Shown here: piece after piece, positions 21,343 through 58,076 of the stretch | Numbering within the stretch: position 1 is the stretch's first letter | Layout of the letters: each line of letters begins with the position of its first letter | NCBI GenBank assembly: GCA_904063045.1 | Contig: CAJFCJ010000015.1 | Location: 434,001 to 498,000, forward strand | DNA from: Dimorphilus gyrociliatus | Taxonomy: Eukaryota; Animalia; Annelida | Direction of reading: 5' to 3' | DNA: 64,000 nucleotides | The notes under the pieces: generated by a model | Seen by the model: the letters and a program-made list of their open reading frames with translations, nothing else | Told to the model about the DNA's origin: nothing | Databases searched by the model: none | Translations under genes and position numbers: made by a program

Positions 21343-21888
21343 TATTATAATTTTTTTACAGGGTGAAGCAATCAACTACACTCTTTTTAAGAAGCTTAGT
21401 AGACCAATCAGATGAGTAAGGTGAGATAAATCTCTGCTCGACTTTTTACTTTATATATTTCATTTTCTGAGTACCAACAAAAATTAGATACGTGCTTTAC
21501 TGAATATTTTTTGTTAAATTTGCTTATTTTTATCCTTTTCCAAGAAATAAGTCATATTTTGTTATACGCCCTCTTATGTGAAAACAAACATCTTCATATC
21601 TTGTTGGAAAGTCTGAAACAAAAGAGATAAAAGGAAAAGAAATTATAATATTTATTTTTAGTTAAGAACCTAATTAGTTAATTAATTAATTACAGAATCT
21701 AATTCTAAACGTCTTTTATATACTTATTCTATATTTAATTTAAAGTAAATCGAAAATTTACCTAAAATAATAAGCATACCTTAAAATATGTTTGTAAGTA
21801 TAATTAAACAAAAGAGAGCTATCAATTGTTAATCACTTAAAAGATTCTACGAAAAGATAGCTAATAATAAAGTTCTCTCACTTTGGTG

Positions 21889-24800
21889 TTAAGCGCACAT
21901 TTTCTGCCTTTGATTTTCCAACTGCAAAGAAAAGAGATTTGAAAATGTGAATAAAGTTACTGGTATTTTCCTCTTTCTCTCATTCCTACTCCACTTCTTT
22001 CTTTCTCTCTTCTCTCTATCTGATTTCATTTTTTCTATCATCTTTCACTCATCCCACGCTGACATTGTTCAAATCTTTAAATAAACGCCTTTTTCTTTAG
22101 ATTTGTCCCTCTTAATTAAGTAAAAGAATATGTATTAAAATAAGACAGAGGAAAAAGGCTCAGGTGGTGTCTTGGACTTATCTATTCTCTGATTATTATT
22201 CACACAACCCTCGAAAGCTATTTGGCCGTGTAATTCACACGTTCTTCCTCTTGTTAATATTTTTGTCTTTTTAATTACTATTATAGGCCTGTAGAAAATA
22301 AAGTTTTCCTATTTTCGGTAATTTAAAAAGAAACAGTCAATAGTTGCTGACAAGTGAAAAGGAAATAGGAAGTGATGGAATGTTTAAAGTTAAAACTATT
22401 CTTTCACTCTTACTCCCACTCTCCTCTCTCCTCTCTCTACTACGCAGTCTAACATAACCTTCAACTCTCGTTCACATTGTGATAGGCTTTTTTTTTAAAG
22501 CAGAACCATGTTCCCTTCTTTCTACTCATACTCCTTCTCCTCCCCTTCGCCCCCTTCTTATTCTGTATTCTATTCATATTCTCCGTTTTATTCTCAATAA
22601 ACAAGTTTATCTCAGAATCATATGTTTTAAATAATTAATACTTTCACTCAATAGATGTATAGACGTTATCGATATTGTTAGACAAACAACTATTTAACAA
22701 TACCCTTGTCAATCGTAAAGTATATCTTGTAGATAGTGAATTATATTGATCATATTTTAAGTATAATTATCATATTCATATTAACTAGTCAGTTATTCAT
22801 CAATCTGATTTATTAATTTACTATTCAAATCAGAAAGTATCTTCTGTGAACTTTGTAATAAGGCTAGATAATTAAATAAAGAGAAATATTCAGTCAGTCA
22901 TGCCAATAGCGTAGGATTTTTGTTTTCGTTGAAATGACATAAAAGTTTTAAATTCCATTAGAAATTATTTATCGCAGAGATTACTTATGAATTTAATACA
23001 TAATAGTGTACTCTCATTTATTTGCATATACTATTCCAAACTGCTAATGGAATAATAAAGAAAATATCACTTAATGTTCCTACATGCTTGAACAAACGTT
23101 TAACAAACTGACCATGAAACCATCAGTTGACTAATTTGAGCTTTATCGTTTAAAAGATCAAGCATTTAATGTAAACCAAGTACAAAAGTATTGGAAAATG
23201 AGTTACCTAAAATCAATAAATGTCAAATCATGGAAATTAATTTTAAAATTTAGCAGTTGAGATGAAAATTAGAGTTTTGAAAGGAGGATTTTTAATCATG
23301 GTTTTTTTAAAGGACTTTAAAAGCTGTTATAAATTTCTTTAGCCTTTATAATAACAAATCCCAACGATTTTTATATCTTTTAAATTAAGATATTTGGCAT
23401 AAAAGAGGAAGGATTTATGGACACTCGCTAAGGTTAATGATTACTGTACTGATTAAATAAGGCTTCCACACGTTGGCCTAGATTAGAGAAAGCCCTTATA
23501 CATATTTACTTTTTTCAAGACCCTCCTCTCTCCTCTCAATGCTCCTCCTACTCCTCTTTCACTCATACAACAAGAATAGATACATTTTATATATCAAGTT
23601 GACAATATATAAATTTGTATCCTTACTCTATAACTCTTTCATCACTTTCATTACACTATTACTCTCCTACCTCAATAGCTTTAAAAGTGTAGAACATAGC
23701 ATTCTGCTGGAGTCTTTCGCAAGCCTCTTCTTCAGAGCCTCTCTTTCCCCAGCCCATCGCCCGCTTTCCCCAGCCCATTGCTCTCTTTCCCCAGCTACGT
23801 CTCTTCTCTTCAAGAGCATCGAACTGGAAAACATTTCCAAGTATTAAAAAAAACGGAAAAGGAAAAGTAAAAAAGATTTATTGATGAATTTTATTGAAAC
23901 TATTTACTTATTGATTGTTTAATTACTAATAATATTCATAAAAATTTCAATTGAAAGACAAAAAATTTCTTTATCAATCTGAGTAATAAGAAAAGAAAAT
24001 CTCTTTATCTTCACAAGTGACATGACTAATTAGCTTACAAAACCACTAGGTTTAAACTTTATTAACCTCAATTCTTTCGTGCAAAAAGAGCATGAAACCA
24101 ATCCAAGGATTATATATATATATACATATGTTTAGTTTCTATTTTTATATAAATCTTAATTCTGTATTTCTCAAATGGCTCTTATACCAAAACAATTTAA
24201 AAGATATCCTGCTAAGCCTAGTTGACTCTTTCTCCGCCTAACCTTATCACTCTTCTTTTCTTCTCCATTTTTATCGTCTCCAGCTACTTATTTATTAAAT
24301 AGAAATATTCCTCACTTTTATCTCTCTAGTCAATTATTAATCAGAATAACCTACTTCTTATCAGGGATATCAATTACAAACCCCGAAGCAGCCATTCTCC
24401 TTTCTTTTGAAAATTTAGTTGCTTTTTCCTATATTGCTTAGTATAATAAGGGAATCTATTAAGAAAAACTTGAAAAATGTCTAAGCAAAAGAAAACAGAC
24501 AAAATTTCCATCTAATCGTACTAATTAATGACTTGAATTGTTTCCGAAAAGTCATTGAGATAACACTGAAGAGTAGTACTTATTCTTACTCTATACTCTC
24601 AAAATAATTCTCCTATCCCACTCCTTTTACCTCCTTTTCCCATTCATTCTATCCACTTGCTACCCTCTTAAAGATGATATAAAGATTTCCATAATTATAT
24701 TAAGAAGAGAAACGAAAAGCGACCTTTTTTTAACTTGTTCCCTAAATGAATAAGATATCGTTCAAAGAGAAAGAAAAATACAGATTATATATTAACTTTT

Positions 24801-25311
24801 CAGAAAACTTCTTCTCTTCTGAATTGTCGTCTAATCTCAGTAATTTCCTGCAATAGCAGGATTTTCCAGATTCTCTTATTTGACATTTAACCAAATTTTT
24901 TAAGTACTAAGAAATAAATTATTAAGATAGTTGATTATTTTAGTAACTTATCTAGTTTAAATAGAAGAAATCGGTCATTTTTACTTTACTCTTCTAAACT
25001 AAAAGAAAGTTTGTCAAACAAAATGTCTTTAACACCTTCATATATATAAAGGCCATTTTGATTATATTCTTTATATAATATAAACTGTTAGCCGATTGAT
25101 AACTTTTCATCTTTAAATTTCTATTTTTTTTTTAGTAAAAGTTAAGAGAAAACTATATTTTATCAATTGAACTTACTCTATCTTCATCATCCGATCTCTT
25201 TCCCCATGACCTCTTTCCCCATCCTCTTCTCTTTTCCTCAGCAGGAGATTCGTCGGCAGTAACGTAAATTGTAACAGCAATTAATAGAAAAGCAACCACA
25301 GCTAACTTCAT
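21889..25311 (-). CDS. RGWamide/APGWamide-family neuropeptide precursor, 106 aa, 3 exons (missed by the ORF track)
   Basis: Exons are 25177-25311, 23671-23823 and 21889-21921, with both introns phase 0. The protein reads MKLAVVAFLLIAVTIYVTA-DESPAEE-KR-RGWG-KR-SWG-KR-SDDEDR/FDALEE-KR-RSWG-KR-AMGWG-KR-AMGWG-KR-GSEEEACERLQQNAMFYTFKAIE/LENQRQKMCA*. It shows a signal peptide, dibasic cleavage sites, amide-donor glycines and a two-Cys tail. Confidence 0.95.
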
Positions 25312-25368
25312 ATCGTAATATCTTCTCTTCTTTTCTATGTAGCATAAAACTGACGACAGACGTCGTAT

Positions 25369-25374
25369 TTTATA
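25369..25374 (-). promoter_or_regulatory. TATA box of the RGWamide gene
   Basis: TATAAA on the minus strand ~58 bp upstream of the ATG. Confidence 0.55.
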
Positions 25375-25915
25375 CCTTAACAGCCTACGCCTAATGAATA
25401 TTCATCTGCATATAATAAAAATTAATCTAGGCGTTAGTTTAAATTCGTATTTCTATGTGTAGGAATAATCATATTTATGAAACATAGATATACATAAGTT
25501 TAATCTTTATAAGTCGAAGCAATTTATAATTGTATTTAAATAATTTATAATATTTAAATGTACTGCACATAAATTCAAAAATCTGTACTATCTAATGAAT
25601 ATGTATTTATGCACTTTCTTCATCATCACCTCGTGCTGCTTTGACTACTTCTTCTTGTTCCCCTTCATCAATATCTTTGCCAAAGATGTTTATAGGTAAC
25701 GACATTTAAGGATAATGATTTTAAATAACAAGTTTCTTGTTTTTCTGCTAAAGATACATGAATTATTCACCTATTCTTGTTCTTTCAAAAAAACCCTTGA
25801 AACGTCTACCTACTATTATAATTACTTCAAATTTCTATTTATACATTTTTGATTCTAAATTTATTCCGATCGCTTTCTATTAATCTAATGATAAGGTCAA
25901 AATTTATCTCCATCC

Positions 25916-25923
25916 TGACGTCA
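25916..25923. promoter_or_regulatory. Perfect CRE palindrome ~600 bp upstream of the RGWamide ATG
   Basis: Exact TGACGTCA; CREs are common in neuropeptide promoters. Confidence 0.4.
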
Positions 25924-28096
25924 TTAGACAGTAAAGCGTTGTATTTTCCTATCGAGTGTTAATTATTCAGCAGTTTTCCTTTATTGTATTACGATATTTC
26001 GATAAATTACGCCAATTACTTAATTAACTCGAGTAAACATACACAAATACAAAGGTTTGCAGATATAAATTAAACTACAAACGTCATCAGAAATACTACA
26101 AAATATCTATTTTATATACTTTGGCTGTATTATTCAAATGTCTATTAATTATATTCACAAAATACAACTAACTTCTTTCTATTTGTTTTTCTAATCCTTT
26201 ATTTATCTTTTTTCTCGAAAACTTTTTTTTATACAATAACATTTAAAAACAGAGAGTAATAAATTATCAAGCAATTGGCATAATGATAGATTAGTCTTTC
26301 TTTTAAAGATTAGCTATGGTGAACCTAACCCTAGATCTATGAATAATAATCATTAAAAGTAGACGAAAGGTAGCCGAAACTAGAAAAGGTTTTTTTTATA
26401 AAACTAAAGCAATTTTTCACTGAATCAAGGATATAAATGAATAGTATACAAATATTATGAATATAAGGGTCCTTGGCAAAGAAAAACAACTGGAATTGGC
26501 AATTTTATATTGATGGAAATTTTAAAAATGGCGTATCAAAAGATATTTAAATTCTTGCTTTTGAAAAAGGATTTGTGCAATATTGAAAAAGAATTCTGAA
26601 AGATTAAAAATCGCTATCGACTTAAAGAGAAAAGAAGTCTTTTTAGAAGAAAGATAAACAAATTGAAGAAAGATGCGATGAGGGTTACAAATAGGAAAAT
26701 TACAACAAACTGTGATTTAAATATCTCTTCTTATGTATGGAAAGGAAAGGGTTCATTGTACAGAAGCTGCTCTTTCAAACTTAATCTGAATGAAGCATGT
26801 AGTTCAGTCCAGAGAAACAGCGCTTAAGAAATAAGCGATTAACAGGTGGTAGAGGAGTAAGAAGCCAACCTAAAAAGGCGTTAAGCCAAGGATCTATCAG
26901 CAAGATAGTGTTACTTGCCCGTTAGGCCTAAATTATCATGAGAATTTTTTAAAAATAAGAAACAATATTTGATATCTTGCTCATCAGATTTACCCTCAAT
27001 TGAGAATGCCCAACATGTGTTACAAACTAATATCTACAATGACCCATATATTACAAATTAACACATTTCAACAGATAAATTAAGAGTTGCTTACCATCGC
27101 TTCATAACTCTCTCTGTTAAACAAAGAATTGAACTGCATTTAAAGAATTATCTAAAGTTAAATTAATATTTAAATAATGAACATAAAAAAACAAGTCATC
27201 AGTATAAAAAAGATACTTGTTACACAAACTAATCAAATTGTTTTGATCACACTAAATGAAAATACAAAGTATGAAAAGTTCCTTCAACCACTGTACAAAA
27301 TATATATATAAATTCATATCTTTTATAAAAACGATTTATGCATCTTTATTAGTGCAGAAGTTTGATTACTAAGGCTAAAGAGTGACATCAGATGCGAAAT
27401 ATTCCACATAGAACATCCGCTTTTCGTAGGTGTTAAATCCGATCAAGAAAAAGTTCACTGTTGCTAGTGAAATGTCGTATTCCATTCGGTTTAAATTTTT
27501 CTCCACTATAATTCCTCTGATTAATACTTCCGAATGAAATAGTATTTATATATTCTATTAGTATAGTATAAAAATAGTTCATAATCGGACTTAAAAAATA
27601 GTATCTATTAGACAACAGATGGCATTACTTCTTCTGGCTAACTGAAAAATAGCTTTCTATATCTATCTATATATTACATTATGAATAATACCTATATATT
27701 TATAACACAGTATTTATAGTTTTCTCCTACTAAATAGTTAATTAGTTAGTAATTTAAAGAACAAATATTAATTACGATGTTAAAAATTGCTATTCACAAT
27801 TGCACAATAATCAAGTTTTAAAAACAGTAATTAATTATTGGAAACCATTTGAAGTCTTTTTGAAAATCGTATTCATTAGAGTTTTTTAAGAAAATTTCTC
27901 AGTAAAAACTTTTTTCAACAGAATTAAAATAAATCGATTTAATAAGATTTTAATTTAAATTCTCAGGTGGTCGGGAATTAACGTTTCGTTAAATTAAGCA
28001 AACAACTTCATTAAATAGAGGAAAGCGGTTATTACTCTGTAATAAATAAAAAGGAAACGGAACCGCAAAAAATTAGATAGAGGAGATACAAACAGA

Positions 28097-28100
<4 letters not shown>

Positions 28101-28175
<75 letters not shown>
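28101..28175. repeat. (GT)n(GA)n compound microsatellite
   Basis: Read directly from the sequence. Confidence 0.95.
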
Positions 28176-28180
<5 letters not shown>

Positions 28181-28981
28181 AGAAAAAGTTTCTGAAAAAA
28201 TTTCTTCATTGATTGAGTGTTATAATTGAAAAACAAATGTTGTATAAGCTATTTTTATATTTCATTTGAAATGAGGAGTTGATGTATTAAATACCAATAA
28301 ATTGTAGCATAGATGATTACTGTGTTAATTTTTCATGCAATTAGTCTATTACGATATTGTACTATTGATTTTATTTCACTCGTCATAATTTTTTCATATG
28401 AATATATTTTCCTAGGTCTATATTACTTGTTTTAATTTGATGATTATATAACTATTACTGTATTAAACTCCCATTAAATGCTTATGATGCATATTCTCTA
28501 AATATATCCTTCCAAGCATCCCTTTTATCTTTGTTATCTTTTTTTAATATAAGTAATATAGTAGTATATCTTATTATTCAGATTAATGTAATAATTTTAA
28601 TAATACCTTTTTAAATAGAGAATTATTGAATTTTTAACAAGTTTTTTCAGTAATAACAACTGCAAATTCATCTTTCATGCAGAGTTGTCTCTTAAATGTT
28701 TCTTTCTCTTATTTTCTTGTTTATACTAATCAGAAATATTTATTTTTGAACAATTTGTGAATTTATTTTCTTAATTTTTTTATATACCTTCTTATTTAAG
28801 ATAACATACTTTATAAGTAAAATATTTAGGTTTTTACTTCTTTTATTAGATACACGACTGATAAAGTTTTATTTTGAAAACAAATGAAACGGGAAACAAA
28901 GAGAGAAAGACAAAAAAACACGAAAATTTTAATCCAGAATTCAGGCTAATAATGAATAATCATTATTAAGAAATAAATAAT

Positions 28982-28984
<3 letters not shown>

Positions 28985-29020
<36 letters not shown>
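28985..29020. repeat. (TA)n microsatellite
   Basis: Read directly from the sequence. Confidence 0.95.
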
Positions 29021-29023
<3 letters not shown>

Positions 29024-29257
29024 ATTATTTATATCTATATGTATATGTCTTTATTTACACTTATAACTTTCAGTCGCTGGTTTCTTTTTTTGTTATTGTG
29101 TTGATTATCGAAGAGCCACACATTTTTCCCTATAAATTTTTGTTGAAAGAAAATAATAATCAGATAATAGAAACACTGAAAATTATTTCTTTAAATAGAA
29201 AATACTTGCAAAGAAACAAGAATAAGAAGTTTCCTTTCAAGTTTACTTACTGGAAAT

Positions 29258-29571
29258 TTAATGCTTGCTTTCCACAGCTGCCATACATTTATGGTAATGA
29301 AGTGCTTGAAGCTTTAAAGAGTTATTATACAATTAGGGAAAAGTTTCCACTCTAATTATTATGGTTTATCTCAAACTTTACATACCATCATAGCTTGTTG
29401 AAGAGCAGCAAATGCTTCACGATCCCATTTTAAACATTGGTTCGATCCAGATCGTTTTCCACTTCCCCATTGACCAGGAAGACTAAAGGAAAATTGACCC
29501 TCAATTTCATTAATTTGGAAGGCCAAGAGAAGGCAAGCAAAAGCGATAAAGAATACACTGGAACGGTTCAT
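29258..29571 (-). CDS. GnRH/AKH-superfamily precursor A (predicted pQFSFSLPGQWGSamide), 79 aa, 2 coding exons
   Basis: Exons are 29386-29571 and 29258-29311, with a phase-0 intron at 29312-29385. The protein reads signal peptide MNRSSVFFIAFACLLLAFQINEIEG, then QFSFSLPGQWGS-GKR, then SGSNQCLKWDREAFAALQQAMM/LQALHYHKCMAAVESKH*. A single pGlu-type peptide right after the signal, with F, W and GKR, is the GnRH/AKH/corazonin layout. It is close to the recalled annelid pQFSFSLPGKWGNamide. A 5'UTR intron lies at 29602-29672. Confidence 0.92.
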
Positions 29572-29718
29572 TTTTTTATTTAGAAGTTTTAAAATCTGCT
29601 ACTGAAAAGAAAAGAAAAATATTAAAGATTAGTCTTTTAAAATATATCAAAAATACTTTGAGATATATATACCTAGATCTTTCTTTCCGAAATGGTACGG
29701 ATTAAGGGAAACGAAGCG

Positions 29719-29726
29719 TTTATATA
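29719..29726 (-). promoter_or_regulatory. TATA box of GnRH/AKH-like gene A
   Basis: TATATAAA lies ~45 bp upstream of the 5'UTR donor at 29672. Confidence 0.55.
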
Positions 29727-30556
29727 CATACTGTTTGAATAATAATGAGCTTAATTACGCTCCCTCGCGTGAGATGAGTGTCTGTTTTGTAGATTAAATC
29801 TGCTAAATTTTAGAGTTCAATATCTGCTTACAAAGCAAAAATTTTGGAGCTTAACAGACTAATTATAAAAAACGAAAAAGTAATAAAAAGATAAAGTAAC
29901 CAAACTTTAATTGAGAGAAAGAAAGTTAGATAAAACAAAGAGAACGATTGATTATTCAGTTCAGTTACAAATTAGTATAAAGTAGTCTTTTCTTACTGTT
30001 TAATTAAATTAACTTATTAATAATACTATTCGTATTCTTTATTTTAAATTAATAATGAATAATTCATCTATTGTATAATTGAAGGTTGTGTTTCAAATAT
30101 CAAAATTCATGGAAAAACATACTTCAAAGTTTTAAATAAAACTACTAATAAATATGTTGAAAGTACAATTACTACCAAAAAGAATAATGTTATTATTTAA
30201 AGCGTTTTCCTCGCTGACAAAAATCGAGGGGAAAAAAGAGACATTCCGCTGTCAATTAGAATTTATAATTTATATACAGGATATTCCGGATAGGATACAC
30301 ATCTACAACACATTGAATTTAAGACAATTTAATTATATTCCTTATTTTTCTATCTAACAAGTTATAATTGACTATTATTATAAATTTTTTATTTTTAATC
30401 TTATAACAAACTTGATAGAAAAAATGAAAATTGATACTACGCCATCTCTATAAAATATTCCATCTCTTTAGTATTCAAAAGCAATAGAATATATAACTTT
30501 ATAGTACGAAGAGTTAAAGCTGATATTTTTCTATATATTTTTATATCGTCTTAAAA

Positions 30557-32581
30557 CTAACCTTTATCAAAACTTTTACAAATATCTTCTAAAGTTTTAT
30601 ATCTAGTTTTATCTGGTCCAGGTAATCTTCTTGTTAGACTATTTGAACAAGTCTCCTGTACTATATATACAAAATACCATCGTGGATGGTTATAAGGAAC
30701 CCAAATATAATTAGAAGTGCCTGATACAGATCTACAATCTGCTACGTAGCCAATACCTTGATTAACGCTTGAAGGATATGTATAAATCATATGTTCTGCA
30801 TTGGCAAAACGTTTTTGTGAACAATCTATTAGATTTAACTTCTTAAAAGTAAATTTGCCACTCTGTAACAATTTTGTAAAACCTGAATCACTTCCCTCTT
30901 CGTTTCGTAACTCTATTATCGAATTAAAATGTATTCTTGATATTCTATTTGTAAAAAATTTAATATTCACTCTTCTCCATCGAAATATCGTTATATCCTT
31001 TCTACTAGTTTCTAAACTTGGTGTTATAGTAAAAAGTGGTATACGTCTAAAATAAGGTTTAAACTTTATAGGACAGTGACTAAAATCCACTATATTATCA
31101 AAATCTATATAGTTAACTGAACCGTTTTCGTCGTGAAAGTTGAAATCTTTTCTAGGTATAATTTCCGTTCTATAGACAATACTAACGAAATTAGCCCTAT
31201 ATGGAGAAATATTTATAGTAAATAGCTTAATAAATTTAAAGCAAATTAAAAATAGTTTTAGATAATTAGTACAGTATTTTTCTATAAAGAGGATGATATT
31301 AACTTATTAATATTATTCTTCTTTACTCCTTCATTAATTTTTCAAGGCTGAAATAGTTACTATCAGCTATTATTATGTCCAAAAATATCAGCCTATAATC
31401 TAATTTACTAAATATACTATACGTTCCGCTCTATTTAAGTCGTTTTCTTACCTAAATCCGCAAGGTAAGAAAAAGCTTCCATCATTTAAAATCATAGCGT
31501 TTATTGATTTATTCTCCAAATTATCATAGTCCGCCATTTGTCCCTCTAAAATAAATTTACCATATCTACATTTATTTATGATGTTTAGACGTCCGTGAAT
31601 TGGTACTTTTATAACTTTTTCCATTGGTCTTTTATTATTGCATTCAATAACTAGCGTTCCCCTTGACGACACATTTCCTAATTCAGTGCAATTAGACGCC
31701 TTAGTTTTACTGGATATATTATCCCTCTTTTGTAATTTCTTTTGTTTTTAATGGACAAACACAAAAAATTAATTGCATAAATCAGATAGGGAAAACTTAT
31801 TTAATCTATAAAAACAATGATAATTACTATTGCCTTTAAAAAATCATTATATGAATTGTAATTGTTCGAATAAGCGGATTTTGCTGTACTCCAGTTTTTA
31901 ATTTTCTCAGCTTTTGTGTTAAACTCATTTGTCAATGGGAAAGAAGAATTACAAAAAATTCTACTTTCCTTCTTCGCCGCATCAACACAATAACACGCAA
32001 ATCTAGCCTCAACAGGCTCAAAAAAAGAGGCGCGTTTTGGAGACATTTCTTCAATCTTTGCGTTGATCGACGGTCCTGCTTTAAACTTAATGAAAGGGCT
32101 AATAGGCAATCTAAAAAGGGATAACAATTCAAATAAGCACTCTTACTATTCATATTTAAATTTGGTAAATTACCCATATTCTTTAAGATCAACCAACCTC
32201 CAGTCGAAACTCGAATGAACAATGTTATCTGTAATCAATTTACATAGGAAAATAAGCCACAAATATTCAGTCCTAATCATTTTAGTATATCATCTATTAA
32301 GAATATTTCAACTAATTAAATATTTGAATTGAATAATACTATATAGTATTTTTCCATTCAAAATATGTTAATCAAACATAATGATATTATAAACACTAGA
32401 TGGAAGAAGCGTGAAAAAGTAAAAAAAGAAAAACGATGTATGCGACATCTGTCAGTTATGAGATTCCTTAAAACAAATTCAAATGTACATATATTTTAAC
32501 CCTCTTCCTTTACGTTCAAGATGTTAAATCTTAATAAAAATATGGCAGTATGATGTGCACCATATAGAAATAGAATTGCCT
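30557..32581 (-). CDS. Uncharacterised multi-exon protein (about 408 aa or more, 5' end not found)
   Basis: Phase-compatible exons are 32501-32581, 32174-32228, 31828-32110, 31452-31738 (AAG acceptor, less certain) and 30557-31079. They join three long ORF-track segments. I recognise no family. Confidence 0.65.
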
Positions 32582-32960
32582 CTAACACAAACTTTAACCT
32601 TTCGCTTTAATGTTGATAAAACTACTTCCAGTTACAAATACGTCAACCCATTAACATTCATTAATAATTATAATAAAAAGTACTTAAACATAAACCAAAA
32701 GTGATAAATTAGATTTTAAAAATACACTGTAATATACTGTATATTTAGCTCTAATCAAAATTTAATGTATTTCTATTAGTTGGACTTGTAAGATAGATTC
32801 TTGAAGTTTTTAGCTGAGATTTCCTTTTTTCTTCGTTAGCAAAGATATTCTATATAAACTATATATATAAAGTAATCTTCATAAAAATTGGAACATCTCA
32901 AATTTTGAATAGGCCAACATAATAAAAATCTTTTTCACTAAGAAAAAAGATTTTTTTTTA

Positions 32961-33313
32961 ATTTTTTTCCACAATTCATCCTCAGATTCGAATTGTAGAC
33001 CGTCATATACCAGGTTTTTGGTGAGGTGCCATATGTTCTCAATTGGGCTGAGATCTGGACTCTTTGCTGGTCAATCAAGAGGGTGGATACCTTTCATCTG
33101 AAAGGTTCTTTTAGTCGTCCTGGCAGTATGACACCCAGCGTTATCTTGCTGAAAGTCGTACTTCCTCCCCACTTTTTCCTCAATCTATTCAATAACAGGG
33201 AGAACATCTTCCACAATGGGTGCCATTCCTAAAGCTCTTGCTGTGGCCCGTAGTTTTCCTAATTCATTGTATTTCTTGAATACAAGCTCCCTAATGTCTT
33301 CACTCCATGTCAT
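32961..33313 (-). mobile_element. Decayed, internally deleted Tc1-type (DD34E) transposase
   Basis: It reads MTWSEDIRELVFKKYNELGKLRATARALGMAP-IVEDVLPVIE*IEEKVGRKYDFQQDNAGCHTAR...LD*PAKSPDLSPIENIWHL. The QQDNA..H and (W)P..SPDL.PIEN.W motifs are present, with 34 residues between D and E. Stops fall at 33185-33187 and 33071-33073 (the conserved W, TGG>TGA). I did not find terminal inverted repeats. Confidence 0.9.
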
Positions 33314-33698
33314 ATTTAAATAAATACAATAAAAATAAACTAATATAATTAAAATTAACAATTAATTGATAAACTTGGCTTAGTAAATGAAACAAGTTGA
33401 AAAAAATGTTTTTTAAGACGTCTATTTGAATGCCAAACCGGAAGTCAAGTGAGTGTTCCAATAATTATGAAGTGCGACCAAATAAAGAAAAAATTGATGA
33501 AAATTACCAAAAATATTTTGCTTGTAATATTGATATTATCATTTCCTCAATTTTTTTTAATATTATGTAAATATAGCGCTTTTTTTATATAAATTTAGAC
33601 CAAAAAAAATTCTTTGCAGCGAACAAACAATTTTAAGGGTTAATTAAAAGTTGGCCCATCAAAATTTACCGTGTCACAATTTTTATGAAGTTTACTAT

Positions 33699-33710
33699 AT
33701 ATATATAAAG

Positions 33711-33739
<29 letters not shown>
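33699..33739. repeat. (TA)n microsatellite
   Basis: Read directly from the sequence. Confidence 0.9.
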
Positions 33740-33742
<3 letters not shown>

Positions 33743-34150
33743 GTATATACTATTTATAGATACATAGCTAAAGAGCGAGAGAGAGAAAGAGAAAGACAGA
33801 TCTTAAAAAATCAAAGCAGTTAAGTAATGTGGAAATAAATTACCTATAAGAGGAGCAGATGTTACTCAGTAATCAATAGTAAAAATATGTCAAATTTCAA
33901 AATAAAAGGGAAATTAAAAAAGATATTCTCATAATTTAATTTCCTTTTTTTATTGTTTTTTTCGTTTATTATTTGAAATGTCAAATCTTTAATTATAAAA
34001 TTAAATAGACAATGAATACTATTGAAATTTATTAGTTGTCTTCCAACGGAATATCTTCAAAAGAAAAACAAATTCATTAATGTTTAAGTTTGACAAATTA
34101 TTTCTCTTTAGAGCTATAGACTTTCACTCATTAACTAGCCTGTAATACTT

Positions 34151-34156
34151 TATAAA
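34151..34156 (+). promoter_or_regulatory. TATA box of GnRH/AKH-like gene B
   Basis: TATAAA lies 65 bp upstream of the ATG at 34222. Confidence 0.5.
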
Positions 34157-34221
34157 CAGACAAGAAATTACAAACCAACCAATCTCCGATTTGCAGTCGT
34201 CTCGAACGTTGATTTAAAAGA

Positions 34222-34522
34222 ATGAAACCGATAAAGTTTGCTATTTTATCAATTCTTGTGTTATTATTATCTAATGCTGAAGGACAACTAACTCAAACCC
34301 TAGGATGGGGCAGTGCTGGTTCTCCTGGCAAGAGAAATGGATTGTCTTCCTTCTGTAAAGATTCATTTCACAAAGTTCAATTTCTTATCTCCGCTTATCA
34401 GGTAAAAAGAGAAAAAATTTTATATTTGAAAGCAACTTTTCATAGATTTCTTCTCCCTAAAATTTTTATAGAAAGAAGTCTGGAAATTAAAAAGCTGTAG
34501 ATGGACGAATGATATGAAATAA
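34222..34522 (+). CDS. GnRH/AKH-superfamily precursor B (predicted pQLTQTLGWGSAGSPamide), 76 aa, 2 exons
   Basis: Exons are 34222-34401 and 34472-34522, with a phase-0 70-bp intron. The protein reads signal peptide MKPIKFAILSILVLLLSNAEG, then QLTQTLGWGSAGSP-GKR, then NGLSSFCKDSFHKVQFLISAYQ/KEVWKLKSCRWTNDMK*. AATAAA lies at 34587-34592. Confidence 0.9.
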
Positions 34523-35090
34523 TGTTATGTAAAGAAAGAAAATCAAGAATTAAAAACCATTAAATCAAAACCAAACAAAAATACTTAATAAAGCAGACAC
34601 ACAAAGGAAAATGAAACCTGGATAGAACTTTTCAAATTGTTTTCCTTACTGTTTATTTATCGTTTATTTGATTTCAAATGAAAATTTAATAAAAGTGCAT
34701 TTTCATGTTGTAAATTTGTCTATCTATCGATATGCTAAATTTAATTGTTTTATGATATTCAACTGTTTGAAGGCGTATATTTCGAGACATAGAACTGATG
34801 GATAATTAAATATTCGTAGTTATTTCTTGTTTTCATAAATCCAATTGAATAATATATCATCTCCAGTTTCTCTTTAACCTGGAAAAATTTCATTAATGAA
34901 AGTTATTGAATAGGTTACTAGGAAAAATTTCTATCTAGAGAAACTCATTTAGCAATTGATTTAAAATCAAGATAAGCTCGTAAAAAGCAACTTTGTATTT
35001 AATTTGTTAAGTATCACCATAGATATAATACTTGTAAATATAATAATCTTCATTATAATTTCCATCGTTATAGCCTTCTCGTTGTGTTTC

Positions 35091-35957
35091 TTATTCGAAT
35101 TGGAATTGAAAATTTGTCGTTTCGTAAAGTTCTTTGCATCTTTTGTCTATCAAACTCGACTGATCATCATTCAACACATTCCGCCAATCTCCTACAATTC
35201 CTTTCCTCATAAATGGACTGACGTTACAATCAAAACTATCAATCATTGTATAATTTGTTGCCGCATTTGACTTCATAGCTTCAAAAGTTGTATTGTTTGC
35301 TATTTCTTTTATCAGGTCATCATTCAAATCAATTTCAAGAAATTTTGAAACAAGCTTGACGCATCGTTGTAAATCTCTTTTCATCTCTTCATAATGCATA
35401 AATAGTATCTTAGGATGGTCTTTAAATTTCCACCAATTAGCGATGAAATCTAATGGATCACCGTAAGGTAGCTTCCTCTGTATAAAAGTCTCAAAAAGCT
35501 CCTCAAATGATCCATCAAAATTTCCCATCGTTTTATTCATTTGAATAAAGCTATATAAGCTAACCAACAGATCTTTAGGATTTCTTACAACTACGATAAA
35601 TTTTGCTCCAGAATTGAAGTGTTTTTCAAAGAAATAAGAAGGTAAATGAGTTTTCATTAGCCTTGGTGGTTCTTTGGGTAAATTCTCATAATTATTTCCG
35701 TTTACATCTATTTCAATATAAGGAATTGCATTATAAATCTCTATCTTTTTTGCTGCATCAATATCTTTAAAATTCATAATTAACCAAACAATTTCTTGCA
35801 TCCAGGTAGTACCGGATTTCATAAAAGTCGAAATTAAAACATCACCCTCGCCCATTTGGAAGTTGTACATAATTTTTCGTAGACTGGAAGCCGGAACAAA
35901 ACCTGGATAGATAACATTATCCTCCCATACATAGTCATCTGGAGCTCTATAACTCAT
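35091..35957 (-). CDS. Cytosolic sulfotransferase (Sulfotransfer_1), 288 aa, intronless
   Basis: It carries the PAPS-binding loop TFMKSGTTW, the catalytic KTHLP, the 3'-phosphate-binding RNPKDLLVSLY and the C-terminal RKGIVGDW. Confidence 0.95.
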   Translation of the reverse strand: MSYRAPDDYVWEDNVIYPGFVPASSLRKIMYNFQMGEGDVLISTFMKSGTTWMQEIVWLIMNFKDIDAAKKIEIYNAIPYIEIDVNGNNYENLPKEPPRLMKTHLPSYFFEKHFNSGAKFIVVVRNPKDLLVSLYSFIQMNKTMGNFDGSFEELFETFIQRKLPYGDPLDFIANWWKFKDHPKILFMHYEEMKRDLQRCVKLVSKFLEIDLNDDLIKEIANNTTFEAMKSNAATNYTMIDSFDCNVSPFMRKGIVGDWRNVLNDDQSSLIDKRCKELYETTNFQFQFE

Positions 35958-36982: not shown

Positions 36983-39900
36983 TTACTTTACAAGTCCTTG
37001 TCTTTTCGCTTCTGTTTCATATATCAACAACCTCCACATTTTAACGACGAACACTTCAGCTTCCTCGTCAAGTACCATCTCGACATCCTTTAGTATACTA
37101 TCAGGTGTGCATCTAGCCATTACTTTCTGGCAAATAAAATCCGTTAAGGTAGGCTCTTCTTCACCTATGTATTCAACTATTTTCTTATCAACCCAAGGTC
37201 GTATACGTTTGTCCATTAGAGAAGCATCAACCATTGCCCAATTCAATGAATATGCGAAAGCTGCACTTTTCTCTGTCGGAATAGAATCGATAAGTTTTTT
37301 TATTAGTTTTCGCTTTTCTTCAGCACTATTTGGAGCCTTATTGAGGGCATCGTTGGGGCCAGGAACATCGCCGTAATCGATTGGCACTAATTTTCTCCTC
37401 TTAGCAGCTGCTGCTTCATCGTCGTCGTCATCTTGATTGAAAACTGTATCGACCAACTTTTTCTTAGTTGGCTGTTGTTGAGGAGGTGTTGTGGTGTCTG
37501 AACTGTTATTTGATAATTTTATGGCGCTAAAGCCCAATTTTTTAACCTCTGATTGAGGTGGTAAACGATCATTCACTTCAGGTCGAGGTGAATTTGGAGG
37601 ACTAGACGATCTCATGTTCGAATCAGGTGATGGTTGATCTAAGTTAAACGAATGGATAGGTTGACCCAACCTTGGAAGTAAGTGTTGATCTCTCTCCTGT
37701 TCAATTTTCGCCATTTCTCTATCGACATCAGGATGACCATCCTTTTCCATCTGCTTTCGAATTTCTTCTAATTCATGCCTTTCCTTATTTCTATCTCTCG
37801 CGTCACTCTCCATTTCTCTTTCTCGCTCTCGAAGGCGCTTCGTCAAAGCGTTATCTTTGTAATATTTTCCATCGTCCCTCTCATCGTTATAATCTTCCAA
37901 AAACTGCCTTAGTCTCTTAGCTTCTTTCTTTTCAATTGTTAGTCGTTCGTTTTCCTTTTCTTCATCCTTAGAATATTCGCGAGACTTCATCCTTTCCCTC
38001 TTTTCCCAAGTTTTCAATCTTTCCTGATAAGCGGTTTCTTTTTGTTTCAACTTTCTCTCGGTTCTTTTTCGTTCATACGAAGCTTCTTCTTCATCATCAG
38101 AAAAATCTGGAGACTTGTGATCTTTCCGATCCTTCGCTCGGTAGTCATTCTTATCGCGATCTCTTCCTACAAGTATATTTAAACAACGATCAATAAATAA
38201 AAAACCAAGAATTTAAATTTTTATAAATTTTTATAATAATATTAATAATATTAACCTTTTGTTCGATCGCGATCCCTATCATCTCGAACCCGATCTCGCT
38301 CCCTCTCCTTATCTCTCTCACGTTTTTCGGCCTCAACCTCCCTTCGTTTACGCAACTCTCTTGCATAATCACGTTCTTTATCTCTTTCAACTTCATCTGC
38401 ATCCTGATACGAAAATATAACAATTATCAACTAAAGTAATTTCATTCTTAACTACGTAAGATATATATATATATATATATATATATGTAAAAAAATAAAT
38501 ATAAACAATTATATCATACAATCAGTCTATTTTGTCAGTGAAATATGTCAAAAAATTTCACAGAGAAAATATTTATTTCTAATACTCGTATAGTAGAAAT
38601 ATAACCGTTAAGCTATCACCGAATCTTCGTGATTGAACGAGCACCAATTGCAGAATATTCGACCATATATACCAATAAGTTTTCTTCGTGTACTCTTCAG
38701 TAAGTCTGCTTTACATAGCGAACATGTATGTTGGATGAATGCGCACGTCCAATAAATAAAATAAAAGGGTAACTTTTAAAAGAATACAAACCTGTTGCTC
38801 AGCTACGACCATCTTATAAAAATATGCCTACTCACCTTTATAATGTTGATAATATTACGACCCAAGCAATCAGACATTTACATATATAAATTTATATATC
38901 CGCCGTCGCGCTTATTATGTTAAACTCACTGATAATAATAGTAGTGATAATAGTGTAATTTAATACTTTAAGTTTATAGACTTTTTACTATATTTTTTAA
39001 TTAAAAAAAAAAGCACGACTGATAATTTACATATTTGGCGGTTGAAAAATACTACAAACCTTCGAGAATGCCCCTTGACAACGCGAATTGTAAAATACGA
39101 AAAAAATAGTAGCGACTCACCGCTACGAAACGAATACAGATTAATTAGACAAGATGCGATTTGGGATGTACGCGAAGTCCTCAGCGATGTGATATTCCTA
39201 ACAGCTCATCACCAATCCATCCTAATAAATGCCGCAAACCGACTTTGTTAACTCCCAATTTTTTAGTATTTTTCAAAATTTTATATCATTATATTTATGT
39301 ATATAAGTTAAATTTTTAAATTAAGCTCATTAATTAAATTATTTAATTTTAATTCTAAAATAATAAATATTGTCTTTTTATATGCAATATTCACATATAA
39401 TGATTTAATTTTTCATATATGCAAGCATCCTTTTCTTTGACAAATATGATCAATTTCTAATACATAAATATATTCATTAAAATTTTCCTACTTCCAATAT
39501 TCTCTAATATGGAATTTTAACTAAAGTAGAATAAAAGATTTTTTACAAACCTTGTGCTTTTCGCGGAATTTGTTTATTTCTGAATCAATAATGTCTTTCT
39601 TTTCGTCTTCTATATCAATACCATTTAAACTCTGAAATGTAACGTTCATTGATAGTTTTAACAATTAATTCTCAAAAGTTATTTAAACGTACCGTATCTT
39701 TTGCTCTTATCTGTTTGATTTCATTTTGAGGATCATCTGCTAAGCAAGTTTAAAGACTTAGTTAATTAATTTTAATAATAAAAAATATAGTTATGTACCT
39801 TCTTTTGTTAAGTCTTTTTCGTATTCTTTCATTACAGCAGTTAGTCCGGCTCTAGCAACTCGATCTTCTTTTTTCGTCATTTCATTTAACGCCTCCTCTA

Positions 39901-49347: not shown

Positions 49348-51801
<2,454 letters not shown>

Positions 51802-57700: not shown

Positions 57701-58076
57701 ACATCCGCAATCATCGGATTCGTCGTTCAACAACCTTCTCGAGCATTCTTTAACAACCAATGTTAAACTCTTGACAGAAGTTGAAGAGCAACCTGTTCCA
57801 AAAATAATTGGTCAGGATTATACGAATGAAGAAAAGAAAGAAAGCAACAATGATCAAGATTATCATCAATATATGGATATAGACGACCCTCGTCGTTCTG
57901 ATATAAGACAAGAACTGCAAAGAGACGCTTCTCTGAGACAGAGATCTTATAAGAATCGTTCAGATTCAATTCATTTGTTTATATTTTTGTTAGCTATAAT
58001 ACCATCTTTGATACTGCTTTTCAGATTTATACGATCTCGTAGGATCGTTATTCTATATCCCGCACGGTTTTGGTAA
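54705..58076 (+). CDS. C16orf89: UPF0764 / C16orf89-like protein, 460 aa, 5 exons, with a C-terminal TM helix
   Basis: Exons are 54705-54885, 54945-55196, 56812-56975, 57236-57398 and 57454-58076, totalling 1383 nt. It has a signal peptide and the motifs DINFDGIFGLRVLEG, ESDNCFSQL, YVITHQVL, RDLFMEQ, IMSWQHSSGCFG and GCMSHESGVA. The TM helix reads LFIFLLAIIPSLILLF. Confidence 0.9.

What the first reader, a model, noticed from the sequence alone, without database searches (positions are those of the whole stretch)
21889..34522. Three Wamide neuropeptide genes clustered in 12.6 kb: RGWamide beside two GnRH/AKH-type precursors
Seen: three separately promoted, TATA-containing precursor genes. RGWa/AMGWa is on the minus strand at 21889-25311, pQFSFSLPGQWGSa on the minus strand at 29258-29571 and pQLTQTLGWGSAGSPa on the plus strand at 34222-34522. 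Only one clear orphan gene and a Tc1 remnant lie between them. Established: RGWamide/APGWamide (multi-copy precursors) and GnRH/AKH/corazonin (single-copy pGlu peptides) are usually treated as separate families. Inference: the linkage is the remnant of a tandem-duplication cluster from which both families arose, and may allow co-regulation. I cannot tell whether this linkage has already been reported.
Basis: partly seen in the sequence, partly recalled or inferred. Interest (0 to 1): 0.92.

Follow-up and report, generated by a model that had tools for sequence, protein, structure and literature searches.

The report
Linked RGWamide, GnRH1 and GnRH2 genes
In the tiny annelid Dimorphilus gyrociliatus, the RGWamide neuropeptide gene lies within 13 kb of the two GnRH/AKH-type genes and shares their precursor tail design, which gives new genomic support to an old, largely ignored idea that these two peptide families share one ancestor.

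Summary
The window is Dimorphilus gyrociliatus scaffold CAJFCJ010000015.1. Gene 1 is the published D. gyrociliatus RGWamide precursor (106 aa). Genes 2 and 3 are orthologues of Platynereis GnRH1 (ex-AKH1) and GnRH2 (ex-AKH2).

All three share one tail plan: Cys, 15-16 residues, a phase-0 intron, 8 residues, Cys. The RGWamide/APGWamide genes of Owenia, Lineus, Pecten and Haliotis have the same plan. A profile built from 14 RGWa/APGWa tails scores GnRH1/GnRH2 tails above Cys-fixed shuffles (z 2.2-5.2). Platynereis GnRH1 also carries an extra AALGWamide copy.

So paralogy is well supported, and local duplication is the best explanation for the cluster. Conservation of the linkage elsewhere is not shown. 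I found no GnRH-type gene within ±10 kb of the RGWa/APGWa gene in four chromosome-scale genomes, but that reach is too short to decide. Co-regulation is untested.

The APGWamide/AKH common-origin idea dates from 2002, and the RGWa tail and intron were described in 2021. I found no paper reporting the linkage. The same stretch was noted before in this scan (s1-080315).

The parts
21402..25374 (-). RGWamide precursor gene (DgyrCDS10277, 106 aa). It has a TATA box at 25374-25369 and four exons: 25337-25177, 23823-23671, 21921-21882 and 21612-~21402 (3'UTR). It encodes 1 RGWa, 2 (R)SWa and 2 AMGWa copies, followed by a tail of Cys-x16-x8-Cys.
   Evidence: The spliced contigs and joints are. The 3'UTR exon was located. 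The translation is identical to P0004 = CAD5121803.1 and to the published D. gyrociliatus RGWamide sequence.
21922..23670 (-). Phase-0 intron of the RGWamide gene. It lies between the two tail cysteines, 8 codons before the second Cys.
   Evidence: The joint 21921/23671 has GT..AG ends. The intron sits at the same position in Owenia, Lineus, Pecten and Haliotis.
29058..29726 (-). GnRH1-type (ex-AKH1) precursor gene, 79 aa. It yields pQFSFSLPGQWGS-amide and has a tail of Cys-x16-x8-Cys. There is a TATA box at 29726-29719, a 5'UTR mini-exon ending at 29673, coding exons 29601-29386 and 29311-29251, and a 3'UTR exon 29129-<=29058.
   Evidence: Joints and the loose end are, the translation. A 79-aa gene is called at this place in the NCBI annotation. 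The peptide is 10/12 identical to Platynereis GnRH1. The nearest Atlas families are GnRH/AKH/corazonin.
29312..29385 (-). Phase-0 intron of the GnRH1-type gene, 8 codons before the second tail Cys.
   Evidence: The joint 29311/29386 is seen in four runs.
30562..32339 (-). Intervening spliced gene with no recognisable domain. Introns are at 31739-31827 and 32111-32173. It is not a neuropeptide precursor.
   Evidence: Low-depth spliced contigs cover it. It has no Pfam hit. It is conserved at ~66-72% nucleotide identity in a dinophilid relative.
32640..33450 (.).
   Evidence: Transcript contigs have loose ends at 32660, 32948 and 32968. The interval is about 700 bp shorter in the relative's contig L003. 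The ORF pieces gave no Pfam hit.
34151..34788 (+). GnRH2-type (ex-AKH2) precursor gene, 76 aa. It yields pQLTQTLGWGSAGSP-amide and has a tail of Cys-x15-x8-Cys. There is a TATA box at 34151-34156; the exons are <=34246-34401 and 34472->=34788.
   Evidence: The joint 34401/34472 is, the translation. The peptide is 12/14 identical to Platynereis GnRH2. The nearest Atlas families are GnRH/AKH/corazonin. The gene is not among the public gene calls for the scaffold.
34402..34471 (+). Phase-0 intron of the GnRH2-type gene, 8 codons before the second tail Cys.
   Evidence: The joint has GT..AG ends.

Best explanation
This is a 13.4-kb cluster of three paralogous neuropeptide precursor genes in Dimorphilus gyrociliatus. 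The order is RGWamide (-), GnRH1/ex-AKH1 (-), an unrelated gene (-), then GnRH2/ex-AKH2 (+).

Shown: each gene is its own transcription unit, with its own TATA box and abundant spliced mRNA.

Inferred from standard prohormone processing: each product enters the secretory pathway through a signal peptide. It is cut at K/R-K/R sites and amidated at the C-terminal Gly. In the two GnRH-type genes, the N-terminal Gln is cyclised to pyroglutamate. The rest of each precursor is a helical 'associated peptide' bracketed by two cysteines.

Inferred origin: all three genes descend from one GnRH/AKH-type ancestor by local duplication. The RGWamide/APGWamide lineage is a GnRH1-like copy. It lost the long pGlu peptide and multiplied a short xGW-Gly-Lys-Arg module.

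Platynereis GnRH1, which carries the GnRH1 peptide plus one AALGWamide copy, and the composite AKH-like + APGWamide precursors look like relics of a composite ancestor. The compact and conservatively evolving Dimorphilus genome has kept the copies side by side.
For: Real, separately transcribed genes.

Organism and orthology:
- P0004 is DgyrCDS10277 on a 1.43-Mb scaffold.
- Gene 1 is identical to the published D. gyrociliatus RGWamide precursor. The gene 2 and gene 3 peptides are 10/12 and 12/14 identical to Platynereis GnRH1 and GnRH2.

Shared architecture:
- All three genes have Cys-x15/16, a phase-0 intron, then x8-Cys.
- The same 8-codon intron position is seen in the RGWa/APGWa genes of Owenia, Lineus, Pecten and Haliotis.

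Tail profile test, against shuffles with the Cys positions fixed:
- Platynereis GnRH1: z 5.2, p<=1e-5, close to a true RGWa tail (z 5.8).
- Phoronis GnRH2: z 3.3.
- Dimorphilus GnRH2: z 2.8.
- Dimorphilus GnRH1: z 2.4.
- Platynereis GnRH2: z 2.2.

Hybrid precursors:
- Platynereis GnRH1 carries AALGW-GKR between the GnRH1 peptide and the tail.
- P0045, P0048 and P0050 combine an AKH-like pGlu peptide with APGW copies. This matches the rotifer precursor described in PMC10730642.

Genes 1 and 2 both have a 3'UTR intron exactly 7 nt after the stop codon.

My own estimate of the chance that one specified gene is the immediate neighbour of another among ~14,000 genes in 73.8 Mb is ~1e-4. The APGWamide/AKH relationship had been proposed beforehand, so the linkage is an independent test of it.
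Against: - The Platynereis RGWamide receptor belongs to the protostome RFamide/Wamide GPCR expansion, not to the GnRH/corazonin receptor clade (PMC8557429). Common origin of the precursors therefore implies a switch of receptor family.
- No GnRH-type ORF lies within ±10 kb of the RGWa/APGWa gene in Owenia, Lineus, Pecten maximus or Haliotis rufescens. None was found on an unidentified 79-kb contig either, followed ~20 kb to one side.
- The three Dimorphilus genes share no nucleotide similarity.
- The Dimorphilus GnRH1 and GnRH2 tail matches are only modest (p 0.01 and 0.004). An amphipathic helix between two cysteines could arise partly by convergence.
- A corazonin tail from Tubulanus does not match the profile (z 0.7).
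- Linkage is seen in only one genome.
Confidence: 0.6

Rival explanations
1. The precursors are truly homologous, but the adjacency in Dimorphilus is secondary. The RGWamide gene landed next to the GnRH1/GnRH2 pair by rearrangement during genome compaction, or simply by chance. The cluster then says nothing about how the families arose.
For: There is no GnRH-type gene within ±10 kb of RGWa/APGWa in four chromosome-scale spiralian genomes. The copies share no residual nucleotide similarity. An unrelated gene and a probable transposon remnant already interrupt the cluster.
Against: The chance that a pre-specified gene becomes the direct neighbour is ~1e-4 (my estimate). The D. gyrociliatus genome is described as conservative, with an ordered, intact Hox cluster (abstract of PMC7854359). 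RGWa and GnRH1 lie head-to-tail on the same strand, as tandem duplicates do.
Confidence: 0.2
2. RGWamide/APGWamide and GnRH/AKH precursors are unrelated. The two-cysteine helical tail and its intron are convergent or generic features of small prohormones, and the linkage is coincidence. Only GnRH1 and GnRH2 are tandem paralogues.
For: The receptors fall in different GPCR clades. Pfam GnRH/AKH/corazonin models hit none of the three genes. Atlas features place the RGWa precursor only vaguely among neuropeptide precursors, at score <=0.86. The Dimorphilus GnRH tails match the RGWa profile only at p~0.01.
Against: Platynereis GnRH1 and RGWa/APGWa tails are near-identical over 14 residues (YRAIQAEALRINEC against YRAVQAEARRILEC and YKAVEAEAQRINAC). 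The spacing is exactly 16+8 with a phase-0 intron in both families. Natural hybrid precursors exist.
Confidence: 0.12
3. The cluster is kept together by selection because the genes share enhancers or chromatin and are co-expressed in the same neurosecretory cells.
For: All three transcripts are abundant in the same whole-animal libraries. Contig depths are ~2090, ~3190 and ~226 in run X7. The intergenic distances are short, 3.7 kb and 4.7 kb.
Against: Each gene has its own TATA box and transcript. Depths differ about tenfold. An unrelated gene sits inside the cluster. There are no cell-level data. Contig depth is a poor measure of expression.
Confidence: 0.08

Closest known systems
RGWamide/APGWamide precursor family (Thiel et al. 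2021, PMC8557429)
   Same: Gene 1 is the published D. gyrociliatus member. [quoted passage not shown]
   Different: The Dimorphilus precursor is unusually short (106 aa). It has only one RGWa copy beside (R)SWa and AMGWa copies. It also has an extra intron inside the copy region, shared with Owenia but absent in Lineus, and a 3'UTR intron. The paper does not relate the family to GnRH/AKH or report its genomic neighbours.
Trochozoan GnRH1 (ex-AKH1) and GnRH2 (ex-AKH2) precursors of Platynereis dumerilii (AHB62361.1, AHB62375.1)
   Same: The peptides are nearly identical: QFSFSLPGKWGN against QFSFSLPGQWGS, and QLTQSLGWGSAGSS against QLTQTLGWGSAGSP. Both have a single copy directly after the signal peptide, a Gly-Lys-Arg site, and a tail with two cysteines 24 (here 23-24) residues apart.
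   Different: Dimorphilus GnRH1 lacks the extra AALGWamide copy that Platynereis GnRH1 carries. Dimorphilus GnRH2 lacks the long acidic spacer. Their tandem arrangement had been inferred from phylogeny (a duplication in the trochozoan stem) but is not reported as physical linkage in the papers I could search.
APGW/AKH common-ancestor hypothesis ('DNA loss model', Martinez-Perez 2002; Cadena-Caballero et al. 2023, PMC10730642)
   Same: It proposes that APGWamide and AKH/RPCH/GnRH precursors derive from one gene, and it reports a rotifer precursor that carries both an AKH-like peptide and APGWamide copies.
   Different: The hypothesis rests on codon and amino-acid similarity and on tree topologies. 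The 2023 paper contains no synteny, linkage or tandem-duplication evidence. The mechanism proposed there, codon loss by DNA repair, is not what the cluster suggests, which is tandem duplication followed by divergence.
Arthropod AKH/ACP/corazonin precursors
   Same: They have a single pGlu peptide after the signal peptide, a Gly-Lys-Arg site, and an associated peptide with two cysteines 22-24 residues apart. The Bombyx AKH1 tail (IYKLIQNEAEKLLLC) resembles the Mytilus RPGWamide tail (LYKLLNEAEKLHSEC).
   Different: They come from different phyla. No xGWamide copies are reported in the arthropod genes. The receptor relationships are established for AKH/ACP/CRZ, but the RGWamide receptor lies outside that clade.

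Membership tests
RGWamide/APGWamide precursors | Signal peptide followed by multiple xGW-Gly-dibasic copies | tested here: met
   Gene 1 has five W-G-K-R copies: RGW, SW, (R)SW and AMGW x2. phmmer with exon 2 retrieves 54 proteins, nearly all APGW/RGW precursors. The signal peptide was judged by eye only.
RGWamide/APGWamide precursors | Two C-terminal cysteines 20-30 residues apart with no peptide copy between them | tested here: met
   The Cys-x24-Cys tail has the same spacing as 14 non-redundant family tails. Profile z is 5.8.
RGWamide/APGWamide precursors | [quoted passage not shown] | tested here: met
   The joint 21921/23671 is in phase 0, 8 codons before the second Cys. Owenia, Lineus, Pecten and Haliotis have the same position.
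RGWamide/APGWamide precursors | Identity with a curated family member | tested here: met
   The spliced product is letter-for-letter the 'RGWamide Dimorphilus gyrociliatus' sequence in supplement 20 of PMC8557429 and CAD5121803.1.
GnRH/AKH-type precursors (trochozoan GnRH1 and GnRH2) | Single peptide starting with Gln directly after the signal peptide, with a conserved Trp, ending in Gly + dibasic site | tested here: met
   Gene 2 has ...EG/QFSFSLPGQWGS-GKR and gene 3 has ...EG/QLTQTLGWGSAGSP-GKR. The signal-peptide cleavage site is inferred, not computed.
GnRH/AKH-type precursors (trochozoan GnRH1 and GnRH2) | Peptide sequence orthology to characterised members | tested here: met
   The peptides are 10/12 identical to Platynereis GnRH1 and 12/14 identical to Platynereis GnRH2. 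The GWGSAG core is shared with phoronid GnRH2 (GWGAAG in Lingula).
GnRH/AKH-type precursors (trochozoan GnRH1 and GnRH2) | Single conserved intron in the coding region | tested here: met
   There is one coding intron in each gene. Tian et al. 2016 (PMC4923880) state that GnRH-type precursor genes have a single conserved intron. Positional equivalence with deuterostome genes was not tested.
GnRH/AKH-type precursors (trochozoan GnRH1 and GnRH2) | Match to Pfam GnRH (PF00446), Adipokin_hormo (PF06377) or Corazonin (PF17308) | tested here: not met
   There is no hit at E<=10. These models were built mainly from vertebrate and arthropod sequences, so the failure is weak evidence. Atlas features do place both genes nearest to these three families, at scores 0.89-0.91.
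GnRH/AKH-type precursors (trochozoan GnRH1 and GnRH2) | Activation of a GnRH/AKH- or corazonin-type receptor | not testable with these tools
   In Platynereis, GnRH2 activates the GnRH receptors. GnRH1 activates only the corazonin receptors, and only at high concentration (PMC8557429 section 13). Nothing is known for Dimorphilus.
Tandem-duplicate gene cluster | Members are demonstrable paralogues | tested here: met
   They share the tail plan, the intron phase and position, and a significant profile match. There is no nucleotide similarity.
Tandem-duplicate gene cluster | Linkage conserved in other lineages (ancestral rather than secondary) | tested here: inconclusive
   Owenia, Lineus, Pecten and Haliotis are negative within ±10 kb. 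A dinophilid relative keeps the intervening gene and GnRH2 collinear. Its GnRH1 contig ends in a poly-A run and the next contig begins with an A-rich stretch, which is compatible with adjacency but shows no overlap.
Tc1/mariner transposon remnant | Recognisable transposase domains | tested here: inconclusive
   The ORF pieces gave no Pfam hit. The only indirect signs are loose transcript ends and the shorter interval in the relative.

The most novel reading that the evidence does not exclude
The spiralian RGWamide/APGWamide family is a derived branch of the GnRH/AKH precursor family. It arose by tandem duplication of a composite gene (pGlu-GnRH1-type peptide + xGWamide module + two-cysteine tail) in the spiralian stem. 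The copies then divided the peptides between them. The xGWamide product came to act on a receptor from an unrelated GPCR clade (the RFamide/Wamide expansion). Dimorphilus would then preserve the ancestral three-gene cluster. It would also be a clear case of a neuropeptide precursor family and its receptors not co-evolving.
Probability: 0.4. Interest if true: 0.75.

Novelty: new member of a known kind. Interest (0 to 1): 0.58.

Why it matters
Neuropeptide families are usually traced by assuming that ligands and receptors evolve together. On that basis RGWamide/APGWamide is filed apart from GnRH/AKH/corazonin, because its receptor belongs to another GPCR clade.

Here the RGWamide gene sits directly beside GnRH1 and GnRH2. 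The tail design and intron position are the same, and a natural hybrid precursor exists in Platynereis. Together these are independent genomic evidence that the precursors share an ancestor.

If so, a peptide module changed receptor family during evolution. That would also give the APGWamide/AKH hypothesis of 2002 its first structural genomic support.

The question is directly testable with the chromosome-scale spiralian assemblies that already exist.

Tried and rejected
1. Word-indexed protein searches with GnRH1 exon 1, GnRH2 exon 1 and the Owenia RGWa protein found only dinophilid relatives or a handful of RGWa proteins. I therefore obtained no GnRH-type proteins from other phyla as searchable ids, and could not locate GnRH genes on the Owenia, Lineus or mollusc chromosomes.

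2. Synteny within ±10 kb of RGWa/APGWa was negative in Owenia, Lineus, Pecten maximus, Haliotis rufescens and two unidentified ENA contigs, including one 10-kb walk. The reach was too short to decide.

3. I tried to join the relative's GnRH1 contig (L011) to its orphan+GnRH2 contig (L003). L011 ends in a poly-A run and L003 begins with an A-rich stretch, but there is no exact overlap.

4. Pfam scans of the three precursors and of the supposed Tc1 pieces gave nothing.

5. blastn among the three genes found only (TA)n low-complexity matches, so there is no sign of recent duplication or gene conversion.

6. I rejected the idea that the shared 3'UTR intron (7 nt after the stop in genes 1 and 2) is ancestral to the whole RGWa family. 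Owenia, Lineus, Pecten and Haliotis show no GT at that place.

7. Run X12 is labelled 'DNA?', but it covers exons only and carries the spliced joints. I therefore treated it as cDNA and not as evidence for a processed DNA copy.

8. I did not type full-length published precursors into the search tools. Only short tails taken, 51 were used, in a script.

Full report
**Observation**

Transcript contigs from several independent runs cover the exons at high depth and carry the splice joints.
- Gene 1: joints 25177/23823 and 23671/21921.
- Gene 2: joints 29386/29311 and 29251/29129.
- Gene 3: joint 34401/34472.

All introns have GT..AG ends. The spliced products are 106, 79 and 76 aa.

- Gene 1 has a fourth, non-coding exon starting at 21612. 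A 211-nt loose end was located.
- Gene 2 has a 3'UTR exon (29129-<=29058).
- Gene 2 also has a 5'UTR mini-exon ending at 29673. It was inferred from a 9-nt loose end and the sequence.

Each gene has a TATA box at the expected distance upstream. A six-frame scan of the whole 64 kb finds no further gene of this type.

**Identity**

The spliced gene 1 product equals P0004. That is CAD5121803.1 'DgyrCDS10277 [Dimorphilus gyrociliatus]', on the 1.43-Mb scaffold CAJFCJ010000015.1. It is letter-for-letter the 'RGWamide Dimorphilus gyrociliatus' sequence in supplement 20 of Thiel et al. 2021 (PMC8557429).

The same supplement lists two Platynereis precursors.
- GnRH1 (ex-AKH1) has the peptide QFSFSLPGKWGN. 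Gene 2 encodes QFSFSLPGQWGS.
- GnRH2 (ex-AKH2) has the peptide QLTQSLGWGSAGSS. Gene 3 encodes QLTQTLGWGSAGSP.

Genes 2 and 3 are therefore the GnRH1 and GnRH2 orthologues. These are the two paralogues that Thiel et al. infer to have duplicated in the trochozoan stem. Atlas feature searches put both genes nearest to progonadoliberin, AKH and pro-corazonin clusters. Pfam models do not hit them.

The public gene calls for the scaffold include RGWa and the 79-aa GnRH1. They do not include GnRH2 or the intervening gene. The three-gene cluster is therefore not visible from that annotation alone.

**Anatomy and likely function**

Each precursor begins with a hydrophobic signal sequence.

Gene 1 then carries one RGW, two (R)SW and two AMGW units. 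Each unit is followed by Gly-Lys-Arg. An extra intron splits the copy region; Owenia has this intron and Lineus does not.

Genes 2 and 3 each carry a single peptide that starts with Gln and ends in Gly-Lys-Arg.

By the established prohormone pathway, the predicted products are RGWa, (R)SWa, AMGWa, pQFSFSLPGQWGSa and pQLTQTLGWGSAGSPa. That pathway consists of convertase cleavage at dibasic sites, amidation at Gly, and glutaminyl cyclase acting on N-terminal Gln. These products are inferred, not shown.

**Evidence that the three genes are paralogues**

1. *Tail plan.* After the last Gly-Lys-Arg, all three continue with a tail in which two cysteines are 24, 24 and 23 residues apart. A phase-0 intron lies exactly 8 codons before the second cysteine.

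2. *Same plan in other phyla.* Thiel et al. described two cysteines and a phase-0 intron as the hallmark of RGWa/APGWa genes. I confirmed the same 8-codon position in Owenia, Lineus, Pecten and Haliotis.

3. *Same spacing in other GnRH-type tails.* The Platynereis GnRH1 and GnRH2 tails and the phoronid GnRH2 tails also have the 16+8 spacing (sequences).

4. *Profile test.* I built an ungapped profile from 14 non-redundant RGWa/APGWa tails, leaving Dimorphilus out. I compared each target with 100,000 shuffles (20,000 for the gapped GnRH2 case) that keep the cysteines and the composition.

| Tail | z | p |
|---|---|---|
| Dimorphilus RGWa | 5.8 | ~1e-5 |
| Platynereis GnRH1 | 5.2 | <=1e-5 |
| Phoronis GnRH2 | 3.3 | 9e-4 |
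| Dimorphilus GnRH2 | 2.8 | 0.004 |
| Dimorphilus GnRH1 | 2.4 | 0.01 |
| Platynereis GnRH2 | 2.2 | 0.017 |
| Tubulanus corazonin | 0.7 | n.s. |

5. *Hybrid precursor in Platynereis.* Platynereis GnRH1 carries an AALGW-Gly-Lys-Arg unit between the GnRH1 peptide and the tail.

6. *Composite precursors.* The phmmer search returned three short precursors that combine an AKH-like pGlu peptide with APGW copies (P0045, P0048, P0050). These match the rotifer precursor reported by Cadena-Caballero et al. 2023.

7. *Shared 3'UTR intron.* Genes 1 and 2 both have a 3'UTR intron exactly 7 nt after the stop codon. Gene 3 does not, and the four other RGWa/APGWa genes show no GT at that place.

**Linkage**

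RGWa and GnRH1 lie head-to-tail on the minus strand, 3.7 kb apart. The GnRH2 start codon is 4.7 kb from the GnRH1 start codon, on the other strand. One unrelated spliced gene and a probable repeat insertion lie between them.

In a 73.8-Mb genome (abstract of PMC7854359), the chance that one pre-specified gene is the direct neighbour of another is about 1e-4. This is my estimate. Because the APGWamide/AKH relationship was proposed long before, the adjacency counts as an independent test of it.

I could not show that the linkage is ancestral. There is no GnRH-type ORF within ±10 kb of the RGWa/APGWa gene in the following:
- Owenia, Lineus, Pecten maximus and Haliotis rufescens;
- a 7.9-kb ENA contig;
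- a 79-kb ENA contig, followed for ~20 kb to one side.

In those genomes the gene itself spans 8-26 kb, against 3.9 kb here. The negative result is therefore weak.

In a dinophilid relative at ~72% nucleotide identity, the intervening gene and GnRH2 are collinear with the window. Its GnRH1 contig ends in a poly-A run and the next contig begins with an A-rich stretch. That is compatible with adjacency but does not prove it.

**Evidence against, and limits**

- The Platynereis RGWamide receptor belongs to the protostome RFamide/Wamide GPCR expansion, not to the GnRH/corazonin clade. Common precursor ancestry therefore implies a change of receptor family.
- The three genes share no nucleotide similarity, so any duplication is old.
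- The Dimorphilus GnRH tails match the RGWa profile only modestly. Part of that signal could reflect a shared amphipathic-helix pattern.
- Co-regulation is untested. The genes have separate promoters, and their contig depths differ about tenfold.

**Novelty**

Three elements were already known:
- the RGWamide precursor;
- the two-cysteine tail with its phase-0 intron in RGWa/APGWa genes;
- the GnRH1/GnRH2 duplication (PMC8557429).

The idea that APGWamide and AKH/RPCH/GnRH share an ancestor was published in 2002 and again in 2023. The 2023 paper contains no synteny or tandem-duplication evidence.

Full-text searches for RGWamide, APGWamide, GnRH, synteny, tandem and chromosome found no report of the linkage. 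The Dimorphilus genome paper does not mention it either.

What appears to be new is the following:
- the physical cluster;
- the exact identity of tail plan and intron position across RGWa, GnRH1 and GnRH2;
- the reading of Platynereis GnRH1 as a natural intermediate.

**Verdict**

- The family assignments are correct and have been refined to GnRH1 and GnRH2.
- Paralogy is well supported, at about 0.8.
- Tandem origin with retention in Dimorphilus is the best explanation, at about 0.6 overall.
- Ancestral conservation of the linkage and co-regulation remain open.

Noticed in passing
window 34222-34522 and 30562-32339: The GnRH2-type gene and the intervening spliced gene are not among the gene calls on record for the public D. 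gyrociliatus scaffold. RGWa (106 aa) and GnRH1 (79 aa) are. Both missing genes have transcript support.
   Followed up: partly
window 21882-21891 and 29251-29260: The RGWa and GnRH1 genes each have a 3'UTR intron beginning exactly 7 nt after the stop codon. GnRH2 has none within the covered part of its 3'UTR. The RGWa/APGWa genes of Owenia, Lineus, Pecten and Haliotis show no GT at that place.
   Followed up: partly
P0045, P0048, P0050: These are short precursors of 96-130 aa. Each combines an AKH-like pGlu peptide (for example QLTFSSDWHG, QITFSTDWYG, QVTFSSDWDG) with 3-5 APGW-type copies and has no two-cysteine tail. They resemble the Brachionus precursor described in PMC10730642.
   Followed up: partly
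L003, L004, L005, L011 (Logan contigs of SRR23372229, SRR23372215, SRR23372216): A diverged dinophilid-like relative was found, at ~72% nucleotide identity. Its GnRH1 and GnRH2 proteins are 89% and 78% identical to those of the window. The orphan gene and GnRH2 are in the same order. The organism was not identified.
   Followed up: partly
L001 10001-18788 (Owenia) against window 23824-25176: The Owenia and Dimorphilus RGWa genes share an additional intron inside the peptide-copy region, after the first block of copies. Lineus lacks this intron.
   Followed up: no
window 35091-35957, 36983-38050, 46315-48054, 49396-51801, 57324-58076: The neighbouring genes are a single-exon sulfotransferase, a PWI-domain protein, a WD40-repeat protein, a protein kinase and a DUF4735 protein (Pfam). 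None is related to neuropeptides.
   Followed up: no
window ~27994-28236 and ~28990-29030: There are simple repeats in the RGWa-GnRH1 intergenic region, just downstream of GnRH1: an ORF reading through (SL)n/(TH)n at ~27994-28236 and a long (TA)n run at ~28990-29030. The read-laying tool skipped 28900-29057 as repeat.
   Followed up: no
runs X1-X6: Dimorphilus neuropeptide transcripts turn up in libraries labelled invertebrate, marine and coral metagenome. This suggests that the worm, or a close relative, is a common inhabitant or contaminant of marine culture systems.
   Followed up: no
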